Origin: Hemiscyllium ocellatum | Lineage: Eukaryota | Length of the DNA stretch: 64,000 bases | Reading direction: 5' to 3' | Assembly (NCBI RefSeq): GCF_020745735.1 | Contig: NC_083403.1 | Coordinates: 102,944,378 to 103,008,377, forward strand | Shown here: piece by piece, positions 11,570 through 62,132 of the stretch | Layout of the letters: each line of letters starts with the position of its first letter | Numbering within the stretch: position 1 is the stretch's first letter | Program-made: the position numbers and the translations under genes | The notes under the pieces: model-generated | Databases searched by the model: none | The model's input: only the letters and a program-made list of their open reading frames with translations | Told to the model about the DNA's origin: nothing

Positions 11570-11605
11570 AATTCGACGTTTCGGGCATAAGCCCTTCATC
11601 AGGTT
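11570..11605 (-). ncRNA. Minimal hammerhead ribozyme motif (opposite arm)
   Basis: CUGAUGA-A-GGGC-UUAU-GCCC-GAA-ACGU-C with GUC triplet; stem I 5' strand is truncated by the palindrome junction. Confidence 0.65.
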
Positions 11606-11640
11606 CCTGATGAAGGGCTTATGCCCGAAACATCGAATTT
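11601..11640 (+). ncRNA. Minimal type I hammerhead ribozyme motif
   Basis: AGGUUC-CUGAUGA-A-GGGC-UUAU-GCCC-GAAAC-AUC-GAAUUU: 6-bp stem I (with GU pairs), 4-bp stem II. Stem III ACAU is a probable CpG decay of ACGU. Confidence 0.7.
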
Positions 11641-11849
11641 CCTATTCCTTGGATGCTGCCTGACCTGCTGTGCTTTAACCAGCAACACATTTTCAATTCT
11701 GTGAAACCATGTTGACTCTGCCTTGATTACTTTGGGCTTTTCTAAATGCCCAGTTTCAACTTTTTTAATGTATTCTAATTTTTCTTGATGATATGTTAGG
11801 CTAACTGGCCTGCAGTTTGCTGCTTACTGTCTTCCTTTATAGTCAAAAA

Positions 11850-12430
11850 GACATCAGAGCAGACATTGGCTTTTCAGCCCATTGAGTTTGCTGTGCGATT
11901 TAAAGAGCTTATGGTTGATGTGATCATTCTCAACTTTACTTTTCTGCCTTTTCCCTATAACCCTTTCTTCTCTTACAAATCTGTCTGTCTCAACCATAAA
12001 TATATTTAATGACCCACTCTCAGCAGACCTTTGCGATAACAAATTCCACTGATTCACAAGTCTCTGAGAGAAAAATTCCTCCCTATCTGTTTTAAGCGTG
12101 CATCTCTTTATTCTGAGATTATGCCCACTGGTCCTAGACACTCCCACAATGGGGGGGGGGCGGGGAAAAAGGCCTTTCCACATCTACTCTGTCAAGTACC
12201 CTAAGGATCTTATCTGTTTCAATAAGGTTGCCTCATATCCTTCTATATTTCAATGCGTGCAAGTCCAATCTACTCAACCACTCCCCATAAGGAATTCCTC
12301 AAACCTAATATTAGCCTTGTGAACTTTCTCTGATTGACCCCAATGTCAGTATATCTTTCCTTAGATAAGGGGCTCAAAACCGTTGACGGTAATCCAGCTA
12401 TGGTCTGTCTAGTGATTTGCGTAGTTTTTG
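11850..12430 (-). mobile_element. CR1/L2 LINE 3' fragment
   Basis: ORF 11854..12183 (-) SRTSGHNLRIK..FFSQRLVNQWNLL, a typical CR1 ORF2 C-terminus. Confidence 0.75.
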
Positions 12431-12624
12431 AATGAGTTATTAAATTTGCTATCTTCTAATAGAACCTTCCCTGAATCCTACTTTCTTTCAGACTAAAGAT
12501 CACCTTAATGTTTCATTTTAAAATAGTTAAAATAAATTTTTTCTATTGGTTTCTATTTTTCTGGCTAGCTTTCTTTCGTACTGTTAATTGGTCCGTTACT
12601 TGATCCGTTGCTGATAGTCATAAT

Positions 12625-13690
12625 CCTAGAGATGTACAGCATGGAAACAGACCCTTCGGTCCAACCCGTCCATGCCGACCAGATATCCCAACCCAACCTA
12701 GTCCCACTGCCAGCACCAGGCTCATATCCCTCCAACTCCTTCCTATTCATATACCCATCCAAATGCCTCTTCAATGGTGCAATTGAACCAGCCTCCACCA
12801 CTTCCACTTCCTCTGGCAGCTCATTCCATACCTGTACCATCTTCTGTGTAAGAAAGTTGCCCCTTAAGTCTCTTTTATATCATTCCCCTCTCACCCTAAA
12901 CCTATGTCCTCTAGTTCTGGACTCCCCCACCCCAGGGAAATGACTTCGCCTATTTACCCAATCCATGCTCCTCATACTTTTGTAAACCTCTATAAGGTCA
13001 CCCCTCAGCCTCCGACGTTCCAGGGAAAACAGCCCAGCCTGTTCAGCCTCTCCCTCACCCTTTCAAGTTTCACAACATCCTTCCGATAGGAAGGAGACCA
13101 GAATTGCACGCAATATTCCAACAGTGGCCTAAACCAATGTCCTGTACAGCTGCAACATTACGTCCCAACTCTGTACTCAATACTCTGACCAATAAAGGAA
13201 AGCATACCAATCACCTTCTTCACTCTCCTATCTACCTGCGACTCCACTTTCAAGGAGCTATAAACCTGCACTCCAAGGTCTCTTTGTTCAGCAACACTCC
13301 CTAGGACCTTACCATGAAGTGTAAAAGTCCTGCTAAGTTTTGCTTTCCCAAAATGCAGCATTTCGCATTTATCTGAATTAAACTCCATCTGGTCCAGATC
13401 CTGTTGTAATCTGAGGTAACCCACTTCGCTGTCCAGTACGCCTCCAATTTTGTTGTCATCTACAAACTTACTAACTGTACCTCTTATGCTCGCATCCAAA
13501 TCAATTATGTAAATGACAAAAAGTAGACGACGCAACACCGATCCTTGTGGCACTCCACTGGTCACAGACATCCAGTCTGAAAAACAACCCTCCACCACCA
13601 CTCTGTCTTCTACCTTTGAGCCAGTTCTGTATCCAAATGGCTAGTTCTCCCTGCATTCCATGAGATATAACCCTGCTAACCAGTCTTCGA
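12625..13690 (-). mobile_element. HER1-like CR1 LINE, 5'-truncated (~1 kb)
   Basis: ORF 13158..13601 (-) SGVPQGSVL..SKFVDDNKIGG..QRDLGV; 3' end matches copies ending at ~25520, ~29218 and ~42120. Confidence 0.9.
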
Positions 13691-13769
13691 AGTCCACTGT
13701 TTTAACCATTTTTATTCTTTATATTCTGTCCAGACTTTTGTGCTACTTGTCCCAAGAGCGTAAAAACTA

Positions 13770-15000: not shown

Positions 15001-15159
15001 TTTGCAGTTAACTATTTTTACGTTTTTAAAATAGTAGTGTCTGACCCATTCCCCTCTCCCTCAAATTGAATCATCTTTTGCTCATGGCTACTAAGGGGTG
15101 ATTTTTACATTGCAACCATTAATCCTGTTTCATTGCACCAGGTGTTGAACAGCCTGATA

Positions 15160-15555
15160 TTAAAAACTGAAAGTGCTAAAGAATCTCAGAAGGTGCAGCA
15201 GCATTTGTGGACAGAGAATCTGTTTATGTTGCAATCCCAATGTAACTCCTCTTCTGACTATATAGCCTGTTGTTCCAGAGCTGACCAGACATGCTTTTCT
15301 CTTCCTTCCAACTACAAAGCAGATCCATTTCCTCCCATTGACCAACCAAGCCTATTGCCTAACTGTATTGACCTATCATTACCTCACCACTCAGTCCTTC
15401 TACCCACCCAAAACTCATGCCTACTTCCCTTTATCTGCAGCTCCCCTTACACCCACCTCCAGTCCTGAAGAAGGGTTACACCCAAAACATTGGCTCCTCC
15501 ACCTGCTGATGCTGTCTGGCTTACTGGATTCTTCCAGCCTCCTGCTTGTCTTTCT
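15160..15555. mobile_element. Penelope-like terminal fragments
   Basis: Pyrimidine-rich pLTR-like tract followed by CTGAAGAAGGGTTACACCCAAAAC (degraded hammerhead core) and a CTGCTGATGCTGTCTGGC..CTTCCAGC end. Confidence 0.55.
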
Positions 15556-15589
15556 AAGAAACTCACGTAAAAATATTCTGAGAGATCCT

Positions 15590-20089: not shown

Positions 20090-21341
20090 TTTTTTTTCCA
20101 TGCAATACAGTGCATTGTAATGATTGTTAATGGCAATTTTCTTGTGGGTTACTGAATATTTAACATGGTGATGCTAGTTTCTTTGTAACAGAATAGGATT
20201 TCTATGAAGCTTGCTGATTGGCCACAATTTCATTTAATAGCAGCTTATGTTTGGTCCAGTCTTGTGTGTTCCTATGCAGCCAAAATTCTCTCTTTTCAAT
20301 GGTGATGGGTTCAAACCCTTCTCTCTTTGGGTTGGGAGCAGAGGATCATTCTGGGTAATCCAAGATGGAGGATGTGAAACATTTCTGACTGTAACAGGCT
20401 GCTCCTTTTTTATTGAGGTATTTTAGGTTTTGGAGGTAATTTCCTCGAATGCCAGGAGTAGCAATTACTGTTTTTATGTTGTTGCAGTTATTTTGAAACT
20501 TTAAAAAAAAATCTAAACTAAAGCACTTTTAAAAGGGAGAAATACAGACAAAGGCAGCAAGTACATAGTATGTAAAGGAGAGAGAGAAAGAAACCCACAT
20601 TGCTAACCTCTCACAACCATGAATCTGCACAGTAACTGCCTTTGCTGTTTGAATTTGTGTATCGCTGGACATCGGAGTGTATTTAGAAAAACTTAACAAA
20701 CAACAAAACTTACAACTGATCTGGGAGGAACCTGTTTGGGAGAGGTCACAGCACAGAAACAGTTACTTAAATAGTTTTTAAGTATAGCCTTGCTGTAAAT
20801 CTACAGTAGTGAGTAGACTGGGTTCTTTCTTGATTATATGTTTTTGAACTCTGTCTCCTGATTAAATAGTAAAAATATAAGCCATAAGTATTAAGTAAGC
20901 CTGAAGCAGTATTTTGTAGATCAATACGACGGTGCTATTTTCTGTGTCTGTAGATTGGAAGGAGCAAAATAACCTTTAGTAGTGTGATATGCTCTTCTTG
21001 TCAGATGTGGGAGTTTCGGGAGAGTTTAAGGGTTACTGAGGATTATATCTGCAATCCTGTCAGATCAAATGGATTGGTTGGAGTGGCATTGAGGAATTTA
21101 CAAGAGCCTGAGGGTATGATGGATGGCAGTTATAGGAAGGAAGAAAAGCCACAAATACAGTCACATAGATGGGTTAATTCCAAGAAAGGTAGAAGACGTA
21201 GAAGGGTAGTACAGGAGTCTTCTGTGGCTATCCCCATCTCAAACAAGTATGCTGTTTTGGAAAATGTAGGGTGTGATGGACTTTCAGGGGAATGTAGCAC
21301 AAACAAGCTTCTGGTATCAAGACTGGCTCTAAAGTAATCGG

Positions 21342-22009
21342 TGAACTTCACCAGTTTCTTCATTTCCCCCCCCCCCCACATCTTACCTCAGTTCCAACCT
21401 TCCAGCTCAGCACTGTCCTCATGTTGTACCTGCTAATCTCCCTTCCCACCTATCCCCTCCACCCTCCCCTCTGACCTATCACCTCCATCTCCACCCCCAT
21501 TCACCTATTTAAGGGCGGCATGGTGGCGCAGTGGTTAGCACTGCTGCCTCACAGCTCCAGAGACCCGGGTTCAATTCCCACCTCAGGCAACTGACTGTGT
21601 TGAGTTTGCACATTCTCCCCGTGTCTGCGTGGGTTTCCTCCGGGTGCTCCGGTTTCCTCCCACAGTCCAAAGATGTGCAGGTTAGGTGAACTGGCTGTGC
21701 TAAATTGCCCGTAGTGTTAGGTGAAGGGGTAAGTGTAGGGGTATGGGTGAGTTGCGCTTCGGCGGGTCGGTGTGGACTTGTTGGGCCGAAGAGCCTGTTT
21801 CTACACTGTAGGTAATCTAATCTAATCTAATCTAATCTATTGTACTTTTTGCTACCTTCTCACCAGTCTCACCCCCTCCATTCATCTCTCCACCCTGGCG
21901 GCTTCCTGCCTCTATTCCTGATGAAGGGCTTTTGCCCGAAACATCAATTTTCCTGCTCCTTCGATGCTGCCTGACTTGCTGTGCTTTTCTAGCACCACTT
22001 TGATCTAAA
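21342..22009 (+). mobile_element. Penelope-like 3' fragment inserted in CR1 ORF1
   Basis: Matches 29970-30300. 15-bp TSD CTCTAA(A/T)GTAATCGG at 21327-21341 and 22010-22024; hammerhead core at 21918-21945. Confidence 0.85.
21513..21840 (+). mobile_element. HE1 SINE nested in the Penelope fragment
   Basis: GGGCGGCATGGTGGCGCAGTGGTTAGC head, B box GGTTCAATTCC, (TAATC)n tail. Confidence 0.92.
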
Positions 22010-25000
22010 CTCTAATGTAATCGGGTTCCAAGCAATTGATTTATTTTAGGGGACTCTCTGGTCAGGGGCACAGATAGACGTTTCTGCGGCCAGCTGTGAA
22101 AAATCAGAATAGCGTGTTGCCTCCCTGCTGCCAGGATCAAGGATGTCTCTGAGAAAGTGCAGAATGTTCTCCAAGTGGTGAGGCACCAGCAGGAAGTTAT
22201 TGTACACATTGGTACCAACGACATAGTAAGGTAAAAAAGATGAGATTCTGAAGGTAGAATATAGAAAGTTAGGCAGGAACTTAAAGAGGAGGTCCTCGAA
22301 GGTAGTAATATCTGGATTACTGCCCATGCTACGAACTAGTGAGGGTAGGAATAGGAGGATAGAGCAGATGAATGCTTGGGTGAAGAGCTGGTGTATGAAA
22401 AACTGATTCACATTTTTGGATCATTGGAATCTCTTCTGGGGTAGAAGTGACCTGGACAAGAAAGATGGATTGCACCTGAGTTGGAAAGGGACTAATTTAC
22501 TGGCAGGGAGATTTGCTAGAGCTGCTTGGGAGGATTTAATCTGGTATGGGGGTGCGGAGGAGGGGCAGGCAGTGAGATACTGAGGAAAGAGATAAATCTG
22601 AGACAGGTACAGTTAAGAAAAGAAGCGAGTCAAACAAACAATCAGGGCAGGCAGGAACAAAGCAGCGACAAGGTCAGACTGATAAATTAAACTGCATTTA
22701 TTTCAATGCAAGAGGCCTAACAGGGAAGGCAGATGAACTCAAGGCATAGTTAGGAACATGGGACTGGGATGTCATAGCAATTACAGAAACATAGCTCGGG
22801 GATGGATGGGACTGCCAGCTTAATGTGCCAGGATACAAATGCTATAAGGAGGACAGAAAGTGAGTCGAGAGGAGGGGAGTGATGTCTTTGATAAGGGATA
22901 GCATTACAGCTGTATTTCGAGAGGATATTCCTGGAAATGCATTCAAGGAAGTTATTTGGGTGGAACTGAGAAATAAGAAAGGGATAATCACCTTATTGGG
23001 ATTGTACTATTGACCCCCTAATAGTCAGTGGGAAATAGAGAAATAAATTTGTAAGGAGATTTCAGTTATCTGTAAGAATAATAGAGTGGTTATGGTAGGG
23101 TATTTTATCTTTCCAAACATAGACTTAGACTGCCATAGTGTTAAGGGTTTAGATGGAGAGGAATTTGAGTGTACAAGAAAACTTTGAGTCCGTATGTGGA
23201 TGTACCTACTAGAGAACTTGCAAAACTTGACCTATTCTTGGGAAATAAGGCAGGGTAGGTGACTGAGATGTCAGTTGGGGAGCACTTTGGGGCCAGCAGC
23301 CATAGTTCTATTAGATTTAAAATAATGATGGAAATGGATAGATCAGATCTAACAGCCGAAGTTCTAAATTGGAGGAAGGCTAATTTTGGCTAAGGTATTA
23401 GGCAAGAACTTTCAAAAGCTGATTGGGGGCAGATGTTCGCAGGTAAAGGGACGGCTGGAAAATGGGAAGCTTTCAGAAATGAGATAATGAGAGTCCAGAG
23501 ATAGTATATTCCTGTTAGTGTGAAAGGAAAGGCTGGTAGGTGTAGAGAATGCTGGATGGCTAGAGAAATTGAGGGTTTGGTTAAAGAAAAAGAAGGAAGC
23601 ATATGTCATGTATAGACAGGAGAGATTGAATGAATCCTTAGAGTATAAAGGCAGTAGGAGTGTACTTAAGAGGGAAATCAGGAGGACAAAAAAGGAGACA
23701 TGAGATAGCTTTGGCAAATGGGGTTAAGGAGAATCCAAAGGATTTTTATGAATGCATTAAGGACAAAAAGGTAACTAGGGAGAGAATAGGCCCTCTCAAA
23801 GATCAGCAAGGTGGCTTTTGTGTGGAGCCGCAGAAGATGTGGGACATATTAAATGCATATTTTGCATCAGTGTTTACTATGGAGAAGGGCATGGAAGATA
23901 CAGAATGTAGGGAAATAGATGGTGACATCTTGAAAAATGTCCATATTACAGAGGATGAGGTGCTGGATGTCTTGAAATGCATAAAGATGGATAGATCCCC
24001 AGGACCTGATCAGGAGTACCATAGAACTCTGTGGGAAGCTAGGGAAGTGATTGCTGGGCCACTTGCTGAGATATTTGTATCATCAATAGTCAAGGTGAGG
24101 TGCCGGAAGACTGGAGCTTAGCTAACGTGCTATCATTATTTAGGAAAGGTGATAAGGACAAGCCAAGGAACTGTAGACCAGTGAGCCTGACGTCAGTGAT
24201 GGGCAAGTTGTTGGAGGGAATTCTGAGGGATAGGATAGGGATAGGTGTAATTGGAAAGGCAAGGATTGATTTAGGGATAGTCAACATGCCTTTGAAAATC
24301 ATGTCTCACGAGCTTGATTGAGTTTTTTGAAGAAGTAACAAAGAGGATTGATGAGGGCAGAGTGGTAGACATGATCTGTATGGACTTCAATAAAGAGGCC
24401 AACAAGGTTCCCTATGGGAGACTGGTTAAATCCTGTGGAATACAGGGAGAACTAGTCATTTGGATACAGAACTGGCTCGAGGTAGAAGACAGGGTGGTGG
24501 TGGAGAGTTGTTTTCAGCCTGCAGGCCTGTGACCAGTGGAGTACCACAAGGATCAGTGCTGGGTCCACTACTTTTCATCATTTATATAAATGATTTGGAT
24601 ATGGACATAAGAGGTATAGTTAGTAAGTTTGCAGATGACACCAAAATTGGAGGTGTAATGAACAGCAAAGAAGGCCTACTCAGATTACAGCAGGATCTTG
24701 ATCAGATGGGGCAATGGGCTGAAGAGTGGCAGATGGAGTTTAATTTAGATAAATGCGAGGTGCTGCATTTTGGCAAAGCAAATCTTAGCAGGACTTATAC
24801 ACTTAATGGTAAGGTACTACGGAGTGTTGCTGAACAAAGAGACCTTAGAGTGCAGGTTCATAGCTCCTTGAAAGTGGAGTCACAGGTAGATAGGAGAGTG
24901 AAGAAGGCATTTGGGTATGCTTTCTTTAATGGTCAGACCACTGAGTACAGGAATTGGGAGGTCATGTTGTGGCTATACAGGGCATTGGTTAGGCCACTTT

Positions 25001-25559
25001 TGGAATATCGCATGCAATTCTGGTCTCCTTCCTATCTGAAAGATGTGAAACTTGAAAGGGTTCAGAAAAGATTTACAAGGATGTTGTCAGGGTTGGAGAA
25101 TTTGAGCTATAGGGAGAGGCTGAACAGGCTGAGGCTGTTTTCCCTGAGTGTTGAAAGCTGAGGGGTGACCTCATAGAGTTTTATAAAATCATAAGGGGCA
25201 TGGATAGGATAAATAAACAAAGTCTTTTCCCTTGGGTGGGGGAGTCAAGAACTAGAGAACATAGGTTTAGGGTGAAAGGGGAAAGATATAACAGGACCTA
25301 AGGGGCAACTTTTTCATGCAGGGGGGTGGTGTGTATATGGAATGAGCTGCCAGAGGAAGTGGTGGAGGCTGGTTGCAATTACAACATTTAAAAGGCATCT
25401 TGGTGGGATAAGGTTCAAGTGCTGGCAAATGGGACTAGATTAGGTTGGGGTATTTGGTCAGCGTGGACACGTTGGACCAAAGGGTCTGTTTCCATGCTGT
25501 ACATCTCTGTGACTCTATACAGGTAGCATCTGTGGCTTGGATCATCTCACCTTTGTCGG

Positions 25560-27380: not shown

Positions 27381-27676
27381 TAGATTAGATTACTTAGTCT
27401 GGAAACAAGCCCACACCGACCCGCCGAAGCACAACCCACCCAGACCAATTCCCCTACGTTTACCCCTGCCCTTAACACTACAGGCAATTTAGCTTGGCCA
27501 ATTCACCAATGCACATTTTTAGACTGTGGGAGGAAACCAGAGCACCCTGAGGAAACCCACGCAGACACGGGGAGAATGTGCAAACTCCACACAGTCAGTC
27601 GCCTGAGGCGGGAATTGAACCCGGGTCTCTGGCACTGTAAGGCAGCAGTGCTAACCACTGTGCCACCGTGCCGCCC
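27381..27676 (-). mobile_element. HE1 SINE
   Basis: Reverse complement of the HE1 copies at 21513 and 62434, with an internal deletion near the tail. Confidence 0.92.
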
Positions 27677-28189
27677 AAAACTTCCTTTTTTTTTATCAAA
27701 CTCTCTATTCCTTGACATCCAGGGTCCCTTCACTCTTAGAGGACAAGCTGGTCCTGAATTCTTACTTTTTTTTAATTCCCTTGTTCCAAATGTTGACTTA
27801 CCTGTCTCTGAATATAGAAATTTGTGGATTTCGAATCTCATTTTGGGGATATAAGCATAATCTAGGCTGACCTGCCAGTGCACCTTTGGATGGAAATGAA
27901 AGATCCAGGAATACAATTTTGGAGAAGAGTGGGGGAGTTCTGTCTGTACTGGCCACAAAGAACTAACATCCAAAATCAGATTTAACTGATCAATATACTT
28001 GTGGGAGCTTGCTAATTACAAATTGACTATGCACGTTGAAAGTTGCAATTTAAATTGCAATTTCACTGACTGTAAACATGTGAAGTGTGCTATTTTAAAA
28101 TGTTCAGGGCATCTCAAATATTTTCATTACGTGTAAAGATGCCGTATTAGCATATTTTGATTGCTTTCCATCCTATAGACTAACTGAAG

Positions 28190-29218: not shown

Positions 29219-29364
29219 CGAAGAGAGATTAATGAACTGAAAGTCCGCTTTGATCGTGTTGGTTCAAGAATAAATGTTCACTTTGGTACTGGATTGAGCT
29301 CCCCTCCTCTTCAAGAACTGCCACAAAAAACTTTTACCTTCACGAAAGAGGGTAGGTCAGGCCT

Positions 29365-30345
29365 GGTAAGGACAGAACTCCCTGGTGCTCACCTTCCACC
29401 CGACCAATCATCGCATAAACCACATCATCCAACGACATTTCCGCCACCTCCAAACAGACCCCACCACCAGGGATATATTTCCTTCCCCACCCCTTTCCGC
29501 CTTCTGCAAAGACAATTCCCTCCGTGACTACCTGGTCAGGTCCAAGCCCCCCCAACAACCCACCCTCCCATCCTGGCATCTTCCCCTGCCACCACAGGAA
29601 TTGCAAAACCTGTGCCCACACCTCCTCCCTCACCTCCATCCAAGGCGCCACAGGAGCCTTCCACATCCATCAAAGTTTTACCCGCACATCCACCAATATC
29701 ATTTATTGTATCCATTGCTCCCAATGCGGTCTCCTCTACATTGGGGAGACTGGACGTCTCCTACCAGAGTGCTTTTGGTAACATCTCTGGGACACCCGCA
29801 CCAATCAACCACACTGCTCTGTGGCCCAACATTTCAACTTCTCCTCCCGTTCAGCCAAGGACATGGAGGTCCTGGGCCTCCTTCACCACTGCTCCCTCAC
29901 CACCTGACGCCTGGAGGAAGAATGCTTCATCTTCCGCCTCGGAACACTTCAACCCCAGGGCATCAATGTGGACTTCACCAGTTTCCTCATTTCCCCTTCG
30001 CCCACCCCACCCCAGTTCCAAACTTCCAGCCCAGCACTGTCCCCATGACTTGTCCTACCTGCCTATCTTCCTTTCCACCTATCCAATCCACCCTCCTCTC
30101 TGATCTATCACCTCCATCCCACCCCCATTCACCTATTGTACTCTATGCTACTTTCTCCCCACCCCCAGCCTCCTCTCATTTATCTCTCCACCCTGCAGGC
30201 ACTTTGCCTCTATTCCTGATGAAAGGTTTTTGCCCGAAACATCGATTTTCCTGCTCCTCGGATGCTGCCTGAGCTGCTGTTTTTTTCCAGCACCACTCTA
30301 GTCTAGAATCTGGTTTCCAGCATCTGCAGCCCTTGTTTTTACCTA
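29365..30345 (+). mobile_element. Penelope-like element (Neptune-type), 5'-truncated: RT C-terminus/linker, Cys-rich linker, GIY-YIG endonuclease, pLTR
   Basis: LTFHPTN..FRHLQTDP..FPSPPLSAF..NSLRDYLVRS, then frameshift to FPCHHRNCKTC..NIIYCIHCSQCGLLYIGETGR; hammerhead core at 30216-30243. Confidence 0.9.
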
Positions 30346-32061
30346 GTTGATTTTTACCTCCTTGTTGTCCAAAGAATGACCCCTCTGAAAACGTAATCCT
30401 CCTTGGGTTCTGTACTTAGAATCCTGATGTCTTTGTTATGGACAACACCAAGCCACCTCAAACTATGTTCAAAAGATTGTCTAGCTCCTAATCACTTATT
30501 TTAAAGGTAAGTGTGAGGTGTTGCATTTTGGGTGCAATTTGATTGGTCAAACTACTTGACATTAAGCAAAACAAACTTTAGTTTTCACTACAATTAAAAT
30601 GGACAAACCAATGCTTTTTATTTTAATTTTAACTGTAGCTCTATTAAAATGCTTAACAAAATAGCAGATGTATTAATTAATTAACTGTACAAATATAATG
30701 ATCTCCCATAAATATGTCCTTGGCAAAGGTGAATTCAATAAAATAGATTGTTTCACATATAATTCTAAAATCCAACAGGACAAACATAAAGAGAAAACTT
30801 AGTAGCAAGATGTACTGCAGCTTCCAAACCCTGTTTCAAGACCCCAACAATCATTATTGAAAAACCAGAACTAAAGATCCTGGCACCCATTCAGATTTCT
30901 TCTATTGTTCCACCTTAGAAAAAATCCCAAGGCCTCACAAACTGTTTACAACCTTTGAAGCAATTTAATTGGCACTTCTGTTCGCAACCTTCACAAAGAA
31001 AGGACAAAATGCACCTCTCTAAAGCCATAGTATCATCACACCTCCCGCTCCCTGCTTTAACAAAAAAGAAACCATCAATGTACAAAGATGGCTTCATCTT
31101 TAAAGCATCTAGTCTTATGCTATTAGTACATTACAGTGACTGTAAGCATGTAAATATTCACTACTGTGATCCATTTCAGACTTTTTCCCACAAGCAAATG
31201 CCTCCATCTTTCTTCTTCAAATTTGTAACAATGCATCAGCAATTACATTCACTCATTCTGCCACATGTATAATTTTTTAATTGAATGGCTACAATAATAA
31301 GTTCCACTTTATAATCTGGTATTTTTATCCTTAAATTTTTCCAAAAACTTTAAGGGCTTATGATTAATATATACAATCGTCTCAGACACGTTACTGGCAA
31401 TGTAAATGTTGCAACCTCAACACCAAACTCAAGGTTTCCCTCTTAATCGTGGAATATTTCTTGATGAGTTTTCAATTTTCTGGAAAAATACCCAACAGGT
31501 CTTTCTATCGCCTCGTCACTTTCTTGCAAAAGTACAGCACTGACACCCCTTTGAATAACTTTGCATAATTAGGTATGGCTAACACATGGAGAGTGGCAAA
31601 CACAGTTTTCAGGCAGTCAGAATGCCTTCTGACATTCCCTTTCCACTGAAATTTTCTGCATTTCAACAAGTCAATCAGTGGAACAACACTACTAAAATTT
31701 GGTACAAACTTCTGATAAAGACCACTTAGTCCCAGGAATTGTAGTACTACTCTCTTCGTCAAAGGTATGGGAACTCCCCGACAACTTTTGATTTAGTTTC
31801 ATATAGGTCCATCTTTCCATACCCAAAGTGACTTGGGCTTTTGCAAACTCACTCTAAAACTAGGTTTGTCACCAAGCCTACCTCCCAAAGTCAATCAAAT
31901 AATTCCCTAGATGCTTCAAACATTCCTTCCATGTGTGACTGAAAATCACCAGATCATCAATATACACTACACAATTGGGTAAACCTGAAATAACTTTATT
32001 AATTAATCTTTGAAATGTAACTGGTGCATTTTCCATACCAAATGGCATGACATTAAATAAA

Positions 32062-32700
32062 TAGAGTTGAAAAGTGTGGTGCTAGAAAAGCGCAGCAGGT
32101 CAGGCAGCATCCAAGGAGTAGGAGAATCGACGTTTCGGGCATAAGCCCTTCTTCAGGAATGAGGCTGTTGTGCCAAGTGGGCTAAGATAAAAGGTGGGGG
32201 GGTGGGGGGGATTTGGGGGAGGGGCACTGGGAATACAATAGGTGGAAGGAGGTGTGGAAGATAGGCTGGAGAGGCGGTGGGTACGGAGAGGTCGGGAAGA
32301 AGATTGCAGGTCAAGAGGGTGGTACTGAATCTGGGGGTTGGGACTGAGATAAGGTTTTAGATTACTTACAGTGTGGAAACAGGCCCTTCGGCCCAACAAG
32401 TCCACACCGACCCGCCGAAGCGCAACCCACCCATACCCATACATTTACCCCCTACCTAACACTACGGGCAATTTAGCATGGCCAATTCACCTGAACCGCA
32501 CATCTTTGTGACTATGGGAGGAAACCGGAGCACCCGGAGGAAACCCATGCAGACACGGGGAGAATGTGCAAACTCCACACAGACAGTCGCCCGAGGCCGT
32601 TGGGGAAGGGGAAATGAGGAATGTCTGGCCTGCTGCGCTTTTCCAGCATCACACTTTTCAACTCTGGTCTCCAGCATCTGCAGTCCTCACTTTCTCCTAA
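32062..32700. mobile_element. Penelope-like pLTR element inserted in Gypsy RT, containing a nested HE1 SINE (~32357-32598, - strand)
   Basis: Inverted ends GAGTTGAAAAGTGTGGTGCTAGAAAAGCGCAGCAGG and CCTGCTGCGCTTTTCCAGCATCACACTTTTCAACTC; flanking TTAAATA repeats. Confidence 0.85.
32124..32160 (-). ncRNA. Minimal hammerhead ribozyme motif, intact core
   Basis: AUUC-CUGAAGA-A-GGGC-UUAU-GCCC-GAA-ACGU-C-GAUU. Confidence 0.7.
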
Positions 32701-34061: not shown

Positions 34062-34190
34062 ACATTCCTGATGAAAGGCTTATGCCTAAAATGTCTCCTG
34101 TTCCTCAGATGCTGCATGACTTGCTGTGCTTTTCCAGCACCACCCTTTTTGACTCTGACTCTCCAGCATCTGTAGTCCTCACTTTCTCCT
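34062..34190 (+). mobile_element. Short Penelope-like terminal fragment
   Basis: Begins at the hammerhead stem I (ATTCCTGATGAAAGGCTTATGCC); flanked by AGCTGT direct repeats at 34056-34061 and 34191-34196. Confidence 0.75.
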
Positions 34191-35549
34191 AGCTGTCTAG
34201 CCAACTTACCCGCTCTATTTAACCATTCCCTAAAATTTGACACATAATCCAAATGTGTGGATTCTAAACTTTGGCTCACCAATTGTACCTTAATTAATTT
34301 CAGTGTCCTCTCACCTCATGCCCTAATTCAAATGAATTGAATTTAATTGATTTATTCGGTGCATCCCTAATTACAAAAGATCCAAATGGAATTTCTTTAT
34401 TCCAATCCTCTGAACAGTCTTGACTATAAATCCTATACATGATCTTTCAATTATGATGCCACCACTCTAATGCTGTGTGTATTTTGGATGGTACAGAGTG
34501 GATTTGAGTTGTTTTGTTCCTAAGCTATCTGTAACTTTCTTGAATAGCTTTGATGTAAAATTTTGCCCTTGTTCTGATTATGTCTCTATGGATAATCCAT
34601 ATTTATTAAAGAATTTGAGTAACTTTTCTACAATCCTTTGAGCCATAATACTGCATAATGGAATGACCTCTGGAAATCTAGTAGACAAATGCATTATGGT
34701 CAACAAAAACTAATTTTCACTTTTTGTTTTAGGCAGATGTCCTACACAATTGATTATAACTTCAAATGTGGAAATGGTTCTTAAGAGTGCTGATTTTATC
34801 AGTGCCTGAGGTTTTATCATTGCCTCATAAACTGTTTATGGGCTTTGAAGCAGACTAATTGGCACTTCCCACCTCAACCTCTCTTAACAAAAAAAAATAC
34901 TCCTATTAAAGCCATAGCGTGCTCACATCTTGAACCTGCAATTCTCTAAGGGAACTAAGAATGAATATGTTACTTTTAAAAATTGCTTTCTTTTCATTTT
35001 AAATACAATTAAAAATAGCATTTTTTAAAAGAAAGATATTCCTTTTAAGATTGTTGGAATGTTGCCCGTAAACCAAACCTATAAAAGGTCAGCTAAAGAC
35101 CAATTGGGATGTTTCTTTTCTTCTATAGTGGCACAATGTAATTTTTCTCACCATAGCCCTTGTCTGTCCCCAGCAGCCGCACATTCTCCTGTGGAGAGTT
35201 GAACATATTCTAAGCAGTTATGGTGAAAAGCACTCAATCATGCCTTCATTCCCACAAAATGTGATGGAACTAAGAGACAATGATGGCCAGATAGCTAATC
35301 CTGCCAATGGCCAACCTAACATCTTTATGTAGTTATTCAGTCACTAGAACTAGCTGTTTCTTCTATTGCACCATTTACGACTGCCAAAGCTTTCAGCTGC
35401 TCTTCCCTTATATCTTGGATTTTTTTTCTGAGCTACTTTCACATGCTGCCTCCATGTTCTCCTTTAAGAAGCCTTTTCACAATCATGTGATTTCCTATTT
35501 ATTTAAGGAAGGATGTAAATTTATTGGGAACAGTTATCCACTGCCTTCT

Positions 35550-36535
35550 CAAACAGAAGTTGAAGGAAAAGCTCAGCTGGTCTGGCAGCATCTGTGAAGA
35601 GGAATCATAGTTAATGTTCTGGGTCCAGTGACCCTTCCTCAGAACTAATGGTAGCTAGGAAAATGTTGGTTTATACATAGAAGATACGTTGGGGGAGGGG
35701 GTAAGGAGTAAACGATACGTAAGGATAGAGCCCAAAGTGAGACAAGAACAGTTGAACAGACAAAGGAATCGATAAGGATCTGGTTGGGAAGGTGAATAGC
35801 TGTTAATGGAGATTGTTAGTGGCTAACAATAGGTAGTATGTAATGGCAGACTGTGTGATAACAAGGCCTAGTGTATTTGGTAGGGGACTAGGACATTGAG
35901 TTCAGGCACTAAAATTATTGAACTTAATATCCAGAGGGCTTTAGGGTCCCCAGGTGGAAAATGAAGTGTTGTTCTTCCAGCTTGCACAGATCTTCACTAG
36001 ACCACTGCAGCAAACCTGAGACAGAATATTGGCTAGGGTACAGGGTGGTTGGTTGAAGTGACATGTAACTGGAAGCTCCGGGTCTTTTTTGTGGGAGAAC
36101 ATAGTTATCTGCAAAGCGGTCACCCAGACTACTCTTCGTTTCCCTGATGTCGAGGAGATCACATTGTGAGCAATAGATTGTGAGAAGTGCAGGCAAAGTG
36201 TTGTTTCACTCGGAAGGTATGTTTGAGCCCTTGAATACAGAGGAGGTAGGAGGTAAATGGGCAAGTGTTACACCTTTGGTGGTTGCTGGGAAAGCTGTCA
36301 TGGGGCTGTGATGGGTGTTGGGAGTGAAGGAAGGTGGACCAGGGTGTTCCGGAGGTAACAGTCCCCGCGGAAGATAGACAAGGGAGTGGAGGGAATATGT
36401 GTTTATTGATGGCACCTTGGGTGTTGATGCTGGCAGGATGGTAAATAAGGATAAAGGGAACCCTATCACTTGTGGGAGGGGAGAGAGGGGGAGAGAGCGG
36501 AAGTGCAGGAGATGGGTTGGACCCAGTTGAGGGCT
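35550..36535 (-). mobile_element. Second Penelope-like family, 5'-truncated, with GIY-YIG remnant
   Basis: TIYCSQCDLLDIRETKSSLGDRFA..KLEEQHFIFHLGTLKPSG (ORF 35924..36196); degraded hammerhead core at 35611-35642. Confidence 0.85.
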
Positions 36536-51644: not shown

Positions 51645-51775
51645 TCACGATTTGGATGTGCTGGTGTTGGACTGGGGTGGACAAAGTTAAAAATCACACA
51701 ACACCAGGTTATAGTCCAACAGGTTTATTTGGAAGCACTAGCTTTCGGAGCGCTGCTCCTTCATCAGGTGGTTGT
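51645..51775 (-). mobile_element. Short terminal fragment of a third Penelope-like family
   Basis: AAAATCACACAACACCAGG.. end shared with the remnant at ~39775-40050; terminates just past a hammerhead motif. Confidence 0.6.
51736..51770 (-). ncRNA. Minimal hammerhead ribozyme motif, second sequence family
   Basis: CAC-CUGAUGA-A-GGAGC-AGC-GCUCC-GAA-AGCU-A-GUG: stem I 3 bp, stem II 5 bp, palindromic stem III AGCU. Confidence 0.72.
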
Positions 51776-52379: not shown

Positions 52380-54122
52380 CATATCCAAATGCAGCAGGAA
52401 CTGGACAATATCCAAGTCTGGGCTGACAACTGGCAAGTAACATTTACACCACACTACAACAGCAATGATCATATCCAACAAGAGAGAATATAATCATTGT
52501 TCCTTGATATTCAATGACATTACCATTGCTGAATCCCCCACTATCAACATCCTAAGGGTTACCATTGACCATAAACTAAACGAGATTAGTCGAATCTCGA
52601 AGTGAGTAACCCACTCCTGACTCCCCAAAACAAAACTCTCCCACTTGCCTGAATGATTGCAGTTCCAATAACACTCAAGAAACTTGACACCATCCAGGAC
52701 AAAGTAGCCCTAATTGGTACCACATGCACAAACATTCAGTCCCTCCACTAATGACACACAGTAGCAGCAGTGTGTACTACCTACAAAATGCATGGCAGAA
52801 ATTCACCAAGCCTCCTTAGACAGCACCTCCCAGACCTACATGCACCTCCATCTAGAAGCACAAGGGCAGCAGAAACATGGGAACACCACCAATTGCAAGT
52901 TCTCCTCCAAACTGCACATCATCCCGACTTGGAAATATAGCTCTTGTGCCTCTAGTGTCACTGGATCAAAATCCTGAAACACCCTCCCTTACAACACTGT
53001 GGGTCTACCTACATCATATGGACTGCAGCAGTTCAAACACCAGGTGTCACTACGTACTGAGGTTCTACCTGTCCCCGGCATTGTGAAGGGTGGGCCTGGC
53101 CTCACTGTCGTGGAATGCTCCAAGTAATTGGACCATTCCGTTTCACCTGTCCTTTGTGGAGAAATTTGTGAAGAAAAATACCTTTGACCACAAGTCCATA
53201 AGGAAGTGGTCAGCACGTGGTGTCCTGGAGACCCTTTGGGAAAAGGAGAGAACGGATCCTGTTGAGCAGTTCCCTGGGCAGACTGTCAAAGTCATTTGGC
53301 AGAATGCCTCATTGCCAGAACTTTCCAACAAGCACCAAGACATGGCTTGGCTAATAGTGAGGAGGGCTCTGCCTGTGAAATCCTTTCAGCATGCCCAGAT
53401 TTGTTGTGCTACCTCACACTGCTCTCGAGGCGGCTGTAGAGGGAATGAGACTGTCACACACCTCCTTCTGGAGTGTGTTTATAGAAGGTAAGTCTGGAGA
53501 GGAATGCAGTGGTGTTTGTTAAGGTTTGTCCTGAGCAGCTTTGTGATGTGGGACTCCTTGCTCTACGGTCTGTTCCCCTCGATGTACACTGAGACAAATA
53601 TCAACTTGCCTGGGGGATCATCAATTCTGTTTGGTCTGCCCAACCCCTTGCTGGTCTTCCAGCTGAAGAAGTCGACCCCTGACTGAGTGTTGCAGTCTGG
53701 CACATTCCAAAGGTCCAAGACTAACTGCTGAGATTTGCGCTGAAGCTTGGGACAGCTGCTGCCACAGCGCGGTGGGGAAAGACCACTGCATAAAGCCCTT
53801 TTGCCAACAAATAACAAGGGGTCCATTCAGTAATTGGGTTCCACTGATGCCTCAGCTAAATGCCAAGAGGCTGGATGGTTAACGTACAGAATTGTAAATA
53901 CCAATGACTCAGTCTGTTCTCTGAATGTAAAGACATGTAAAGTAAACATCTGAAAGGCATCATCAGCTGTACAGGTACCAAAGATTTCAATGAATAAAGT
54001 ATATTTTTGAAAAAAAATGGACTCCAGCAGTTCAAGAAGGCAACTCAGCACCACCTTCTCAAGGGCAACTAAGGAAGGGCAATAAATGCTGGCCAGCCAG
54101 TGACACCTACATCCCATAAATG
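52380..54122 (+). mobile_element. CR1/L2-group LINE 3' portion, split by a Tx1-like insertion
   Basis: QQELDNIQVWADNWQVTF at ~52390-52450; 3' end CACCACCTTCTCAAGGGCAACT..GGGCAATAAATGCTGGCC resumes after 54035. Confidence 0.75.
53037..54017 (+). mobile_element. Tx1/L1-clade LINE 3' fragment
   Basis: ORF 53090..53491 has a zf-RVT-like motif (IWQNAS..AWL..ALPV..C..C..ETVTHLLLEC); AATAAA then poly-A at ~53994-54017; 19-bp TSD ATGGACT(G/C)CAGCAGTTCAA at 53018-53036 and 54017-54035. Confidence 0.88.
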
Positions 54123-54579: not shown

Positions 54580-54659
54580 CTAAAACGGATAAAGAAAAGT
54601 CATTTTTCTGAGTTAAGCGGTGTGTTCAGAAATCAACCATTGTCAAGGAAATGCAGTCC

Positions 54660-59700: not shown

Positions 59701-61520
59701 CAAAAAAAACAGGGTGACAAGTACATCCTGGTCATCATGGACATATTCTCCAAGTGGGTGGAAGCATTTCCCACAAAAAAAAGGACGGCGCACGCACGGT
59801 ACTAAAATGCCTCCTAAAGGATGTCATCCCCAGATTTGGGGTCCCCAGTAGCATAGAGTCGGACAGAGGGACTCACTTCACTGCTAGGCTTACGACTGGC
59901 ATTAGCAAGACACTAGAGATACCATGGCGACACCACATCCCCTACCAACTCCAGTCATCAGACATGGTCAAACGGATGAAAGGAACCCTTAAGACCACAC
60001 TAATCAAAATCACCCAGGAAACAGGACTGACCTGGCCAGACACTTGCCACTTACTCTCTATACTATACGTGTGCAGGCAAATCACACGACTGCGCTCACC
60101 CCTTTTGAAGTGCCTATGGGACAGCCTATGCCCACTGCTACCAGACCCCCAAAGCTCTCCATGGATGCAGCCCTTCTCCTGATGCAAGAGGCCCTGCTAG
60201 ATTATGTCCAGGCCCTTAGCAGGAGTATTAGTGTTACACATGACCAGGTCAGGGTCATGTTGCCTACACCCCAATCAGTGCCCATTCATCTGTTCCGACT
60301 TGGGGATATGTCATGGTGAACTCACTAGAAAAGGATTCTCTCTCCCCTAGGTGGAAAGGCTGATGCTGATGATGACCCAGACAGCTGTGAAACTGGAAGG
60401 ACAGCCTGAATGGATACATGCCACCTGCTGCAAGAGGGGTCCACCATCAATGAACAGGGACCAGACAGACGAAGATGCCACTTGGAAAATCGAGGATGGA
60501 TCCAGCTGTTCGCTGCAGCCATCACCATCATCACCCTCAGCCTGACCTGTCTGACCATCACACTGTGGCTTGTTGGTAAACAGGGACAAGCGGCGAGACA
60601 TTTGCATGCCTTTGTGCAATACTAACACGTTCTGCCCCCCTCATCACTCAGCTAGCAGAGATCCACTGGGAGAACATCCCTGTCCCTGAGATAACCTCTG
60701 CTGAACCAGGCTCAGACACCGAGAGCTATCTGATGATACCAAGCACCCCCTGCCCACCTGACAATCCTCCAGGCTCTGACTACATTTCCCCTTTCTCATC
60801 ATTCCCCTAACAAAAAAAAAGAGGAATTGTGGGAAAAGATCTGTCACCCTGCCTACCCATAATAGGTCCACACAAAACATAGGAAAGCAAACTTGGCCAA
60901 ACTATACCAAAAACACCCATAATGCTTCAGCAGGGACCAAGCAGGCTGACAAGTGAAACCAGACCGCACTCACAAACAAGGGAATACACTTCCCAGAACC
61001 CACTAACAATACCAGATTAACACAACTATTCCAAAGCCCTGAGGGCTGTCTCATCACAGAGCAATACAAAAGCCACACAAAAGAAAGGTCAGACAAAGTG
61101 GCACTAAAGGACCCTACCCCCAGGATGGGAACAATGGAAGCAACTTACTCACCTACCTGTGAAGAAGACTGGAATCTCCTATCCATTGATACCATCAGGA
61201 TGTTGCACTATATCAAGAATTAGGACATTCATCCAATAACTGTTTTCCAATTATCATCACTGTAACTAGACTACTCCATTTCCAGATACACTGTATCTTT
61301 CCCCATTTTAATTAATCTTATTGTACAAGATTCCTATAAAACCTGGCTTCATCCTCAGCTTGAGGTAGAGAATCCTTGGTCTACCTGTACAGACTGTCAG
61401 TTCTGGGTCAGCCTAGTCAATTTCTCTTCCAGTGATATGGCTTGTAATAAACAGCTTGTCAATGTCACCCGATCTGGTTTGTGTGGTCTCTGCTTTATTA
61501 GGCTAATTTCTCTGATAAAC
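56752..61520 (+). mobile_element. Deleted class I (epsilon/gamma-like) endogenous retrovirus
   Basis: Degenerate gag knuckle ~57844-57890; RT YTWTRLPQDYTESP..LQYADDLLL (~58397-58510); tether; integrase H..H..C..C, WVEAFPT, IESDRGTHF, HIPY..QSS (59480-60000); C-terminal WIHATCCK; PPT 60812-60826; 3' LTR from 60828; 5' LTR remnant 56752-56841. Confidence 0.88.
60828..61520 (+). repeat. ERV 3' LTR
   Basis: TG start after the polypurine tract, TATAAAA at ~61335, AATAAA at 61446-61451; Gypsy sequence (matching ~33085-33140) resumes at ~61520. Confidence 0.75.
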
Positions 61521-61837
61521 CCCATGTGACAGTAATAATTCTTTCAGGTCATTTTGATTTTCTTGTGGAAGGTAACTCAATAAAATATCCCAATTTTTGA
61601 CAACTTCCTCATTGTCCAGTTTGATTTGATGTTGCGTAATGGGATTGCCTCATCCATTATTGCTAATAAATATTTATTCCCACTTTTTGTTTGAGGTACG
61701 GGACCCACGCAATCAATCAAGACACTTGTGAAAGGTTCCTCAAATCCTGGAATGTTATTAAAGGTGCAGGTTTTATTACTCCCTGTGGTTTTCCGATTAG
61801 CTGACATGTATGATGCATCTGGCAAAATTCAACTACA

Positions 61838-61964
61838 GGGAGAAAGTGAGGACTGCAGATGCTGGAGAAGAGAGCTGAAAATGTGTTGCTGGAAAAACGC
61901 AGCAAGTCAGGCAGCATCCAAGGAGCAGGAGAGTCGACGTTTCGGGCATGAGCCCTTCTTCAGG
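61838..61964 (-). mobile_element. Short Penelope-like terminal fragment with hammerhead core, inserted in Gypsy integrase
   Basis: 12-bp TSD AATTCAACTACA at 61826-61837 and 61965-61976; core CUGAAGA-A-GGGC-UCAU-GCCC-GAA-ACGU-C on -. Confidence 0.85.
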
Positions 61965-62132
61965 AATTCAACTACATTCTTGTGTAGTCCAGGCCAGTAA
62001 AAATGTCTTTGTATTTTAGCCTGTGTTTTCCTCACTCCTAAATGACCTCCAAGTGGAAGTTCATGCGCCACTCTCAGCACCTCCTTTCTATACCCTACTG
62101 ACAAAACAATTTGATGAATCTCTGCCTTTTGT

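What the first reader, a model, noticed from the sequence alone, without database searches (positions are those of the whole stretch)
11570..61967. Dispersed hammerhead-ribozyme system: about a dozen Penelope-like termini from 3-4 families with covarying stems
Seen in sequence: the motif CUGANGA-A-[stem II]-GAA-[4-nt palindrome]-H recurs at 7121 (-), 10222 (+), 11570 (-), 11601 (+), 15465 (+), 21918 (+), 30216 (+), 32124 (-), 34068 (+), 35611 (-), 51736 (-) and 61932 (-). Stem II changes sequence but keeps pairing (GGGC/GCCC, GGAGC/GCUCC, GGGUC/GACCC, GGGU/ACCC). Stem III switches between the palindromes ACGU and AGCU. All copies carry one extra A between A9 and stem II. Two copies sit downstream of GIY-YIG endonuclease remnants. 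Established: Penelope-like elements carry minimal type I hammerheads whose tiny palindromic stem III is thought to work as a dimer. Inference: these are ribozyme-bearing pLTRs of shark Neptune-type elements. Cores at 11570, 32124, 51736 and 61932 look intact.
Basis: partly seen in the sequence, partly recalled or inferred. Interest (0 to 1): 0.8.

Follow-up and report, generated by a model that had tools for sequence, protein, structure and literature searches.

The report
Penelope-element ends carrying minimal hammerhead ribozymes
The window holds 13 real copies of a minimal hammerhead ribozyme motif, all sitting in old end-fragments and 100-130-bp mini-copies of Penelope-like retrotransposons; this is a published kind of element and has been noted many times in this genome, so the find is sound but ordinary.

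Summary
Thirteen hammerhead-like motifs from 11 insertion events occur in 64 kb. A strict descriptor finds 4 intact copies against 0.001 expected by chance.

All copies carry the extra A after A9. Helix II and helix I keep pairing with different sequences in four families (A, A', B, C). Helix I was not part of any search pattern.

Families A and B lie 230-280 nt downstream of decayed GIY-YIG endonuclease remnants. These remnants match full-length RT + GIY-YIG proteins and carry the CX4CxxC linker of Neptune-type Penelope-like elements (PLEs).

Every ribozyme feature matches the published "min-HHR" of PLEs (Cervera & de la Peña 2014). Inverted head-to-head copies and 5'-truncated copies are known PLE hallmarks (Craig et al. 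2021).

None of the Rfam families matched, there are no direct tandems (so these are not retrozymes), and catalysis is inferred only. Copies are 73-94% alike and decayed at CpG sites.

One point may be under-described. Five or six events are TSD-flanked mini-copies or palindromes whose 5' ends fall within 6 nt of the ribozyme start.

The scan has already noted this on other DNA of this genome, with 352 notes. Verdict: new member of a known kind, modest interest.

The parts
7061..7155 (-). Family B mini-copy, left arm of a head-to-head palindrome. The hammerhead motif is at 7121-7152: core intact, helix II GGGUC/GACUU with two G-U pairs, ACAU in place of the palindrome.
7157..7246 (+). Family B right arm of the same palindrome. 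The hammerhead is decayed (UAU in place of GAA).
10150..10212 (-). Family A arm truncated inside the ribozyme; it starts at the GAAAC box. Left half of an inverted pair.
10217..10305 (+). Family A arm beginning 5 nt before the core. The hammerhead at 10222 has a mutated core (CUAAUGA, AAA).
11475..11603 (-). Family A arm with a fully canonical hammerhead (helix I to helix I 11570-11606) plus the long tail carrying the roughly 40-nt extension. It is the left half of a 221-bp palindromic insertion flanked by a 14-bp TSD (11461-11474 and 11696-11709).
   Evidence: (I14)
11604..11695 (+). Family A right arm of the same insertion. C3 is at 11607, the palindrome has decayed to ACAU, and the tail is the short form.
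15460..15563 (+). Family A' copy. Helix II is GGGU/ACCC, a compensatory change relative to family A. G12 is changed to A, so the core is dead. The tail is related to family A.
21341..22013 (+). Family A PLE 3' UTR + hammerhead (C3 at 21918) + tail. It is interrupted at 21510-21836 by a tRNA-headed SINE.
29370..30350 (+). Family A 5'-truncated PLE. It comprises an EN linker and GIY-YIG remnant with stops and frameshifts (29370-29985), a 3' UTR, a hammerhead (C3 at 30216, helix II decayed) and a long tail.
32073..32356 (-). Family A copy with at least 200 nt of PLE 3' UTR, a fully canonical hammerhead (32124-32160) and the short tail. It abuts a SINE at 32357-32596.
32622..32687 (+). Tail-only fragment of family A, in the opposite orientation.
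34064..34195 (+). Family A mini-copy starting 4-6 nt before the core. G12 is changed to A. Long tail. Weak 6-bp TSD AGCTGT (34056 and 34191).
35551..36473 (-). Family B 5'-truncated PLE. It comprises an EN remnant (36473-35918), a 3' UTR, a hammerhead (35611-35642; helix II GGGUC/GACCC, helix I 5 bp, GAA box mutated to AGA) and a tail.
51650..51772 (-). Family C singleton with a fully canonical hammerhead (51736-51767). Helix II is GGAGC/GCUCC, the palindrome is AGCU and H17 is A. The tail is unrelated to the others, the ends are not sharply defined, and no PLE coding remnant is nearby.
61838..61964 (-). Family A 127-bp mini-copy with a fully canonical hammerhead. It starts 1-4 nt before the core and is flanked by a 12-bp TSD (61826-61837 and 61965-61976).

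Best explanation
These are dead copies of the 3' ends of at least three or four families of Penelope-like retrotransposons (PLEs). Families A and B belong to the Neptune type.

Anatomy. In each family the 3' UTR carries a minimal type I hammerhead. It lies about 170-280 nt after the RT-EN reading frame and 95-130 nt before the element's 3' end. Its parts, in order, are:
- a 3-5-bp helix I
- CUGANGA
- one unpaired A
- a 4-5-bp helix II closed by G10.1-C11.1
- GAA
- a loop-less 4-nt palindrome in place of helix III
- a cleavage site after C17 or A17

Proposed ribozyme action (inferred from published work, not tested here). In transcripts of active master elements, two such motifs pair through the palindrome to build a shared helix III. 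They then cut the RNA 3' of H17, which processes PLE transcripts.

How the copies arose. The copies in the window were made by target-primed reverse transcription at a staggered GIY-YIG nick, which gives the 12-14-bp TSDs. Some are ordinary 5'-truncated copies that still hold endonuclease remnants. Others are 90-130-bp mini-copies that start within 6 nt of the ribozyme's first base. Several of these are head-to-head palindromes within a single TSD. The palindromes are best explained by priming from both nicks on short template RNAs whose 5' end lay at the start of helix I.

Shown versus inferred. Shown: motif, pairing, covariation, linkage to PLE endonuclease, TSDs and insertion architecture. 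Inferred: dimerisation, cleavage, and the short-RNA template.
For: Enrichment over chance:
- 8 hits against 0.38 expected with the relaxed descriptor.
- 4 against 0.001 with the strict descriptor.
- 12 against 0.03 for the tail motif.

Anatomy of all 13 copies is given.

Helix I was never part of the descriptor. It pairs in 14 of 16 cells across the four families at the predicted register, against 2-6 at slid registers, with a binomial P of about 5e-5.

On the model-fitted alignment of 11 copies:
- 88% of cells pair, against 12-50% when the partner is slid.
- 5 of 8 pairs have changes on both sides.
- The covariation score was reached by 1 of 500 shuffles.

PLE linkage:
- tblastn of full-length proteins (RVT_1 + C-terminal GIY-YIG) finds two endonuclease remnants upstream of 30216(+) and 35642(-).
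- phmmer with the 120-aa remnant gives 871 hits, the best at E=8e-20.
- The CX4CxxC linker is visible.

Insertion architecture:
- A 12-bp and a 14-bp TSD, the latter enclosing a whole palindrome.

Other genomes:
- In assembly GCA_040954835.1 the same design sits 174 nt after a PLE C-terminal reading frame, with yet another helix I sequence.
- In assembly GCA_028641065.1 similar motifs occur.

Literature:
- PMC8557442 describes adjacent inverted 5'-truncated copies, 30-40-bp tail extensions, and hammerheads near PLE 3' ends.
Against: - No Rfam hammerhead family matches, even at E up to 10.
- Helix I is short, and in most family A copies it has a U-U or U-C mismatch at the third pair.
- Thermodynamic co-folding does not favour the ACGU/ACGU dimer helix. 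In 61963(-) an overlapping GUCGAC palindrome wins. The whole mini-copy folds no better than shuffles, with z = -1.1.
- Published in vitro activity of metazoan min-HHRs is low even as dimers (PMC4209133).
- Within family A helix II hardly varies, so covariation rests on only four families.
- Family C has no PLE coding remnant here.
- No RT domain and no full-length or tandem copy lie in the window.
- Hammerhead cleavage happens 3' of the motif, so it cannot by itself explain why mini-copies begin at its 5' edge.
Confidence: 0.82

Rival explanations
1. The mini-copies are a separate, self-sustaining non-autonomous lineage, SINE-like or retrozyme-like. A small RNA made of ribozyme plus tail is transcribed or processed as a discrete unit and copied in trans by PLE reverse transcriptase. 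On this reading they are not by-products of full-length PLE transcripts. This overlaps with the best explanation and differs only in the source of the template RNA.
For: - Five or six of 11 events start 0-6 nt before C3, whereas ordinary 5' truncation should scatter.
- Symmetric palindromes are centred on the ribozyme start.
- The bases before the core fit an initiator-like YYANWYY (TCATTCC, CTATTCC). The family B long copy has TATAAA about 33 nt upstream of C3. These are sequence readings only.
- The preprint 10.64898/2026.07.22.740005 argues that animal retrozymes derive from PLE pLTRs.
Against: - No direct tandem of units lies in the window, which retrozymes need in order to give circular RNA.
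- Mini-copies would not carry an upstream promoter.
- Their sequences match the 3' ends of the long copies of the same families.
- Only about six events are available, and there is no transcript evidence.
Confidence: 0.3
2. The conserved hairpin and boxes are a recognition structure for the PLE reverse transcriptase at the RNA 3' end. On this reading it is hammerhead-like in sequence but not used for cleavage.
For: - The motif always sits within about 130 nt of the 3' end, where TPRT starts.
- Published min-HHR cleavage is weak (PMC4209133).
- Craig et al. (PMC8557442) note that PLE clades without hammerheads proliferate well and that the function is unclear.
Against: - Families with unrelated tails (A versus C) share exactly the 11 catalytic-core positions, the G10.1-C11.1 pair, the A15.1...U16.1 ends of a palindrome and a non-G H17.
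- A protein-binding hairpin would not need helix I at the hammerhead register.
- PLEs of plants and fungi carry canonical, active hammerheads (PMC4209133).
Confidence: 0.1
3. The motifs are chance matches to a short, loose pattern in a repeat-rich genome.
For: CUGANGAA alone is only about 1.8-fold enriched, with 23 hits against 12.9 expected. Most hits belong to one repeat family, so they are not independent.
Against: - The strict descriptor gives 4 hits against 0.001 expected.
- Four sequence-distinct families each keep helices I and II paired.
- The same design follows PLE reading frames in two other genomes.
Confidence: 0.01

Closest known systems
Minimal hammerhead ribozymes (min-HHR) of metazoan Penelope-like elements (Cervera & de la Peña 2014, PMC4209133; dimer cleavage by Lünse, Weinberg & Breaker 2017 is cited in PMC6765202, and the paper itself is not held)
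   Same: - Type I topology with CUGANGA and GAA boxes.
- One unpaired nucleotide between A9 and 10.1.
- G10.1-C11.1 closing pair.
- No loop 3, with a palindromic 15.2-16.2.
- Short helix I.
- Several sequence families per genome with compensatory changes.
- Mostly dispersed single motifs, some pairs on opposite strands.
- Location in the terminal region after the RT-EN frame.
- Found in fish Neptune, Poseidon and Xena elements.
   Different: - Helix II is 4-5 bp here, against 6-8 bp in the Schistosoma and Drosophila virilis examples described in the text.
- Density is about one motif per 5 kb in this window. Published counts for whole genomes are in the thousands (coelacanth about 4,000, Xenopus about 9,000).
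- The clustering of mini-copy 5' ends at the first base of helix I is not described in the papers I could read.
Neptune-clade EN+ Penelope-like elements (Arkhipova 2006; Craig et al. 2021, PMC8557442)
   Same: - C-terminal GIY-YIG endonuclease preceded by a CX2-5CxxC linker.
- Heavy 5' truncation.
- Adjacent inverted 5'-truncated copies forming inverted repeats.
- An optional 30-40-bp tail extension at one end.
- Hammerhead near the 3' end.
   Different: Only C-terminal remnants survive in the window. There is no RT, no full-length copy and no tandem pLTR, and the clade was not placed on a tree.
Metazoan non-LTR retrozymes (Cervera & de la Peña 2020, PMC7229834; Li et al. 2026 preprint 10.64898/2026.07.22.740005)
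   Same: Small non-coding units with a type I hammerhead, proposed to be non-autonomous derivatives of PLE pLTRs. Monomer copies are dispersed through genomes.
   Different: Retrozymes are direct tandem repeats that can give unit-length circular RNA. Here there are no direct tandems, only single copies and head-to-head palindromes.
Rfam hammerhead families (types I, II, III, HH9, HH10)
   Same: The same catalytic core.
   Different: No match at gathering score or at E up to 10. The curated models expect a real helix III and a longer helix I.

Membership tests
PLE min-HHR (Cervera & de la Peña 2014) | Core boxes C3-A9 (CUGANGA) and G12-A14 (GAA), A15.1...U16.1, H17 not G | tested here: met
   8 of 13 copies pass; the other 5 have point changes in otherwise aligned copies. 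With paired helix II and an intact palindrome added, 4 copies pass, against 0.001 expected by chance.
PLE min-HHR (Cervera & de la Peña 2014) | [quoted passage not shown] | tested here: met
   An A is present in 13 of 13 copies across the four families.
PLE min-HHR (Cervera & de la Peña 2014) | G10.1-C11.1 closing pair of a paired helix II that covaries between families | tested here: met
   Ten copies from all four families keep the G10.1-C11.1 pair. The other three are A-U in 34068(+), G-U in 7152(-) and unpaired in 30216(+). Four helix II sequences occur, with compensatory changes at 10.3/11.3 and 10.4/11.4.
PLE min-HHR (Cervera & de la Peña 2014) | No loop 3; palindromic 15.2-16.2, allowing a shared helix III in a dimer | tested here: met
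   ACGU occurs in three family A copies and AGCU in family C. ACAU or AUGU in the rest is consistent with CpG decay.
PLE min-HHR (Cervera & de la Peña 2014) | Short helix I (about 4-5 bp) flanking the motif | tested here: met
   14 of 16 cells pair across the families at the predicted register, against 2-6 when slid. Helix I is 80% paired on the model alignment. Family A has a mismatch at the third pair in most copies.
PLE min-HHR (Cervera & de la Peña 2014) | Lies in the terminal repeat or 3' region of a PLE | tested here: met
   Families A and B follow GIY-YIG remnants by about 230 and 276 nt. Family C is not linked in this window.
PLE min-HHR (Cervera & de la Peña 2014) | Self-cleavage 3' of H17, as a dimer | not testable with these tools
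   Co-folding neither supports nor excludes the dimer. This needs in vitro transcription.
Neptune-clade PLE | RT followed by a C-terminal GIY-YIG endonuclease | tested here: inconclusive
   The endonuclease remnants align to the C-termini of 813-946-aa proteins, most of which hit both RVT_1 and GIY-YIG in Pfam. The RT part itself is missing from both truncated copies.
Neptune-clade PLE | CX2-5CxxC linker before the GIY-YIG motif (absent in Penelope/Poseidon) | tested here: met
   The 30-kb copy reads C-x4-C-x2-C. The 36-kb copy has the same spacing with the first C changed to S. The criterion comes from PMC8557442.
Neptune-clade PLE | Placement within Neptune on an RT phylogeny | not tested
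   There is no RT sequence in the window and no named reference set was available.
Metazoan non-LTR retrozyme | Direct tandem repeats, each unit with a hammerhead, able to give unit-length circular RNA | tested here: not met
   All adjacent pairs are inverted and no direct tandem of units exists.
Rfam hammerhead families | Score at or above the family's gathering threshold | tested here: not met
   There are no hammerhead hits at gathering score or at E up to 10.

The most novel reading that the evidence does not exclude
The 90-130-bp units are not random truncations. They would be copies of a discrete small RNA whose 5' end is set exactly at the first base of hammerhead helix I, by a start site or a processing event in the PLE terminal region. 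This ribozyme-plus-tail RNA would be copied in trans at very high frequency, often from both nicks at once. That would make a ribozyme-headed, SINE-like parasite of Neptune elements and one of the most abundant ribozyme motifs in any vertebrate genome, at about one per 5 kb in this window.
Probability: 0.3. Interest if true: 0.5.

Novelty: new member of a known kind. Interest (0 to 1): 0.27.

Why it matters
The window gives a clean, statistically supported example of PLE minimal hammerheads in what appears to be a cartilaginous-fish genome. Support for helix I is independent of the search pattern, and two families are physically linked to Neptune-type endonuclease remnants.

It adds no new principle. 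The motif design, the dimer idea, the dispersed single copies and the inverted insertions are all published.

Two things could matter if followed genome-wide. One is the very high density of the motif. The other is the sharp 5' boundary of the mini-copies at the ribozyme. That boundary bears on the still-open question of what the hammerhead does for PLEs and how their template RNAs are made.

Tried and rejected
- Rfam scans at gathering score and at E up to 10 gave no hammerhead. The sub-threshold hits (mir-1-like, mir-61-like and others) are unrelated.
- Pfam on the longest mechanical ORFs near the motifs gave nothing, because they were in the wrong frames. Pfam on the correct-frame pieces also failed, as they are too decayed. 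The endonuclease was shown instead by phmmer and tblastn.
- Two full-length PLE homologues fetched with DNA (L001, L002) showed no convincing hammerhead in the short flanks available.
- The locus of the closest full-region homologue (P0008) could not be fetched, and P0001 is not on record.
- MFE and co-fold predictions do not single out the hammerhead dimer fold.
- I considered a type III or permuted hammerhead, or an upstream tandem hammerhead, to explain 5' ends at the ribozyme start. The long copies have no second motif and no matching 16.x strand upstream, so I rejected this.
- I considered a 3' splice site at the start of helix I, as in Drosophila virilis Penelope. The only splice-acceptor-like site is about 20 nt further upstream and is not conserved.
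- Lünse et al. 2017 could not be read.
- tRNA scan: none found.
Full report
**Observation**

A thirteenth, decayed copy lies at 7157(+).

A relaxed descriptor (core, 0-1 extra nucleotide, helix II of at least 3 bp, GAA) gives 8 hits against a mean of 0.38 in shuffles. A strict one adds the extra nucleotide, a helix II of at least 4 bp, a palindrome bounded by A and U, and H17 not G. It gives 4 hits against 0.001 in 1000 dinucleotide-preserving shuffles. The 19-nt tail motif that follows the ribozyme at a fixed distance occurs 12 times against 0.03 expected.

A covariance model built from eight copies recovers 11 copies at E<1e-4, and nothing else is credible. With 7157(+) and the family C copy, the census is 13 motifs from 11 insertion events.

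Rfam has no match, at gathering score or at E up to 10.

**Anatomy**

parses every copy. All 13 carry the unpaired A after A9. The G10.1-C11.1 pair is kept in ten copies from all four families; it is A-U in 34068(+), G-U in 7152(-) and unpaired in 30216(+).

Four families can be told apart:

| Family | Copies | Helix II | Loop | Palindrome |
|---|---|---|---|---|
| A | 8 | GGGC/GCCC | UUAU | ACGU |
| A' | 1 (15465) | GGGU/ACCC | UAC | decayed (ACAU) |
| B | 3 (7152-, 7157+, 35642-) | GGGUC/GACCC | ACUG | decayed (ACAU) |
| C | 1 (51767-) | GGAGC/GCUCC | AGC | AGCU, H17 = A |

Family A' is a compensatory change relative to A, and its tail is related to A. Family C has an unrelated tail.

In the rest, ACGU has mostly become ACAU. 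G12 is lost in 10222, 15465, 34068, 35642- and 7157+. This is ordinary CpG and point decay of copies that are 73-94% alike.

**Helix I**

Helix I was never part of any search pattern, so it is the most independent test. The four bases before C3 pair with the four bases after H17 in 14 of 16 cells across the four families. When the 3' strand is slid by 1-3 nt, only 2-6 cells pair. The binomial P is about 5e-5.

On the model-fitted alignment of 11 copies:
- 88% of cells pair, against 12-50% when slid.
- Five of eight pairs show changes on both sides.
- The covariation score is reached by 1 of 500 shuffles.

Two caveats apply. The alignment was fitted to the structure, and the copies are related.

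Another genome adds a further helix I sequence (CACA/UGUG) around the same design.

**What the carriers are**

Translating upstream of 30216(+) shows a decayed endonuclease. It has a C-x4-C-x2-C linker, then an ...IYCIHCSQCGLLYIGETGR... block, and a C-terminal ...LGTLQPQGINVDFTSF.

- A 120-aa piece has 871 homologues in the representative library, the best at E=8e-20.
- The long homologues are 813-946-aa proteins. [quoted passage not shown]
- tblastn of those proteins against the window finds exactly two remnants: 29370-29985(+) and 36473-35918(-). Each lies upstream, on the same strand, of a hammerhead (30216 and 35642-), at about 230 and 276 nt.
- The 36-kb remnant keeps the same linker spacing.
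- Craig et al. 2021 state that this linker marks Neptune/Nematis and is absent from Penelope/Poseidon. "Neptune-type" is therefore supported by that motif, though not by a tree.
- Copy 21918(+) is a third long fragment, split by a SINE.
- Copy 32156(-) carries at least 200 nt of the same 3' UTR.

**Insertion architecture**

- The copy at 61838-61964(-) is a 127-bp unit between perfect 12-bp target-site duplications.
- The 221-bp palindrome at 11475-11695 sits as a whole between 14-bp duplications.
- Three head-to-head pairs exist, at 7.1, 10.2 and 11.6 kb. Each is centred on the ribozyme starts, with the tails pointing outward.
- Tails end at two alternative points, about 60-65 nt and about 100 nt after H17. 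The longer form adds roughly 40 nt.

Craig et al. describe all of this as typical of PLEs: heavy 5' truncation, an adjacent inverted 5'-truncated copy, and a 30-40-bp tail extension at one end.

**Comparison with the literature**

Cervera & de la Peña 2014 defined the min-HHR of PLEs. [quoted passage not shown] They found these in Neptune, Poseidon and Xena elements of fishes, and reported only weak in vitro cleavage as dimers.

A 2019 review summarises the dimer model and cites Lünse et al. for dimer cleavage. A 2026 preprint reports retrozymes in one chondrichthyan and derives them from PLE pLTRs.

The copies here fail the retrozyme definition, because there are no direct tandems.

**Mechanism**

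Shown:
- the motif
- pairing and covariation of helices I and II
- linkage to a Neptune-type endonuclease
- TSD-flanked insertion, including whole palindromes

Inferred from the literature: in master-element transcripts, two motifs dimerise through the palindrome and cleave after H17.

Inferred from the anatomy: the mini-copies and palindromes were copied from short RNAs whose 5' end lay 0-6 nt before C3. Palindromes arose when both nicks primed cDNA that ran to that 5' end.

Hammerhead cleavage cannot itself create that 5' end, because it cuts on the 3' side of the motif. An initiator-like sequence at the boundary, and a TATAAA about 33 nt upstream of C3 in family B, are suggestive only. Co-folding does not favour the ACGU dimer helix, and the unit is not unusually stable.

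**Earlier notes of this scan**

Earlier notes on this genome already describe the same thing on other DNA. There are 352 notes, and follow-ups called it a known kind that is unusually abundant. I confirmed independently the two notes that touch this window, the palindrome at 11.5 kb and the TSD-flanked unit at 61.9 kb.

**Verdict**

This is a real, well-supported and correctly interpreted feature. It belongs to a published class and consists of old, mostly decayed copies. Interest is modest. The only thread worth pulling is the sharp 5' boundary and the sheer density of the mini-copies.

Noticed in passing
window 21510-21836; also 62174-62738 (two tandem units, period 307), 32357-32596(-), 27510-27677(-), 2102-2214: A roughly 310-nt SINE with a tRNA-like head, a LINE-type 3' tail (GTTGGGCCGAAG.GCCTGTTTC...) and a (TAATC)n end. 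One copy is inserted inside the PLE 3' UTR at 21.5 kb. ARAGORN calls no tRNA in the window.
   Followed up: partly
window 24460-25518, 28249-29222, 41099-42114, 12600-13690(-): Four copies of a LINE 3' part. They have a reverse-transcriptase domain (RVT_1, E=3e-15 for 24460-25161) and the same 3' tail motif as the SINE, which suggests a LINE/SINE partnership.
   Followed up: partly
window 39358-39593 and 39794-40029: A 236-nt inverted repeat, 97% complementary, with a 200-nt spacer. It lies inside a region of duplicated LINE-like sequence (39119-39280 resembles 40536-40697).
   Followed up: no
window 40909-40984 (-): A near-perfect hairpin scoring 33.6 bits against Rfam mir-1, below the gathering score of 45.6. 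The arm sequences do not resemble mature miR-1, so it is probably a repeat-derived hairpin.
   Followed up: no
window 53090-53491 (+): An ORF with a zf-RVT match (E=8e-6, just under the Pfam threshold). It is a further non-LTR retrotransposon remnant.
   Followed up: no
window 61929-61934 (- strand copy): In the 61963(-) copy the cleavage-site region reads GUCGAC, a 6-nt palindrome overlapping the ACGU palindrome. Co-folding prefers this pairing, which would compete with the hammerhead dimer helix.
   Followed up: partly
L004 3762-3809(+), 8088-8115(-), 8361-8409(+); L003 7462-7510(+): Loci from two other assemblies (GCA_028641065.1 and GCA_040954835.1; the tool does not give the organisms) carry the same min-HHR design. 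In L003 it lies 174 nt after a PLE C-terminal reading frame.
   Followed up: partly
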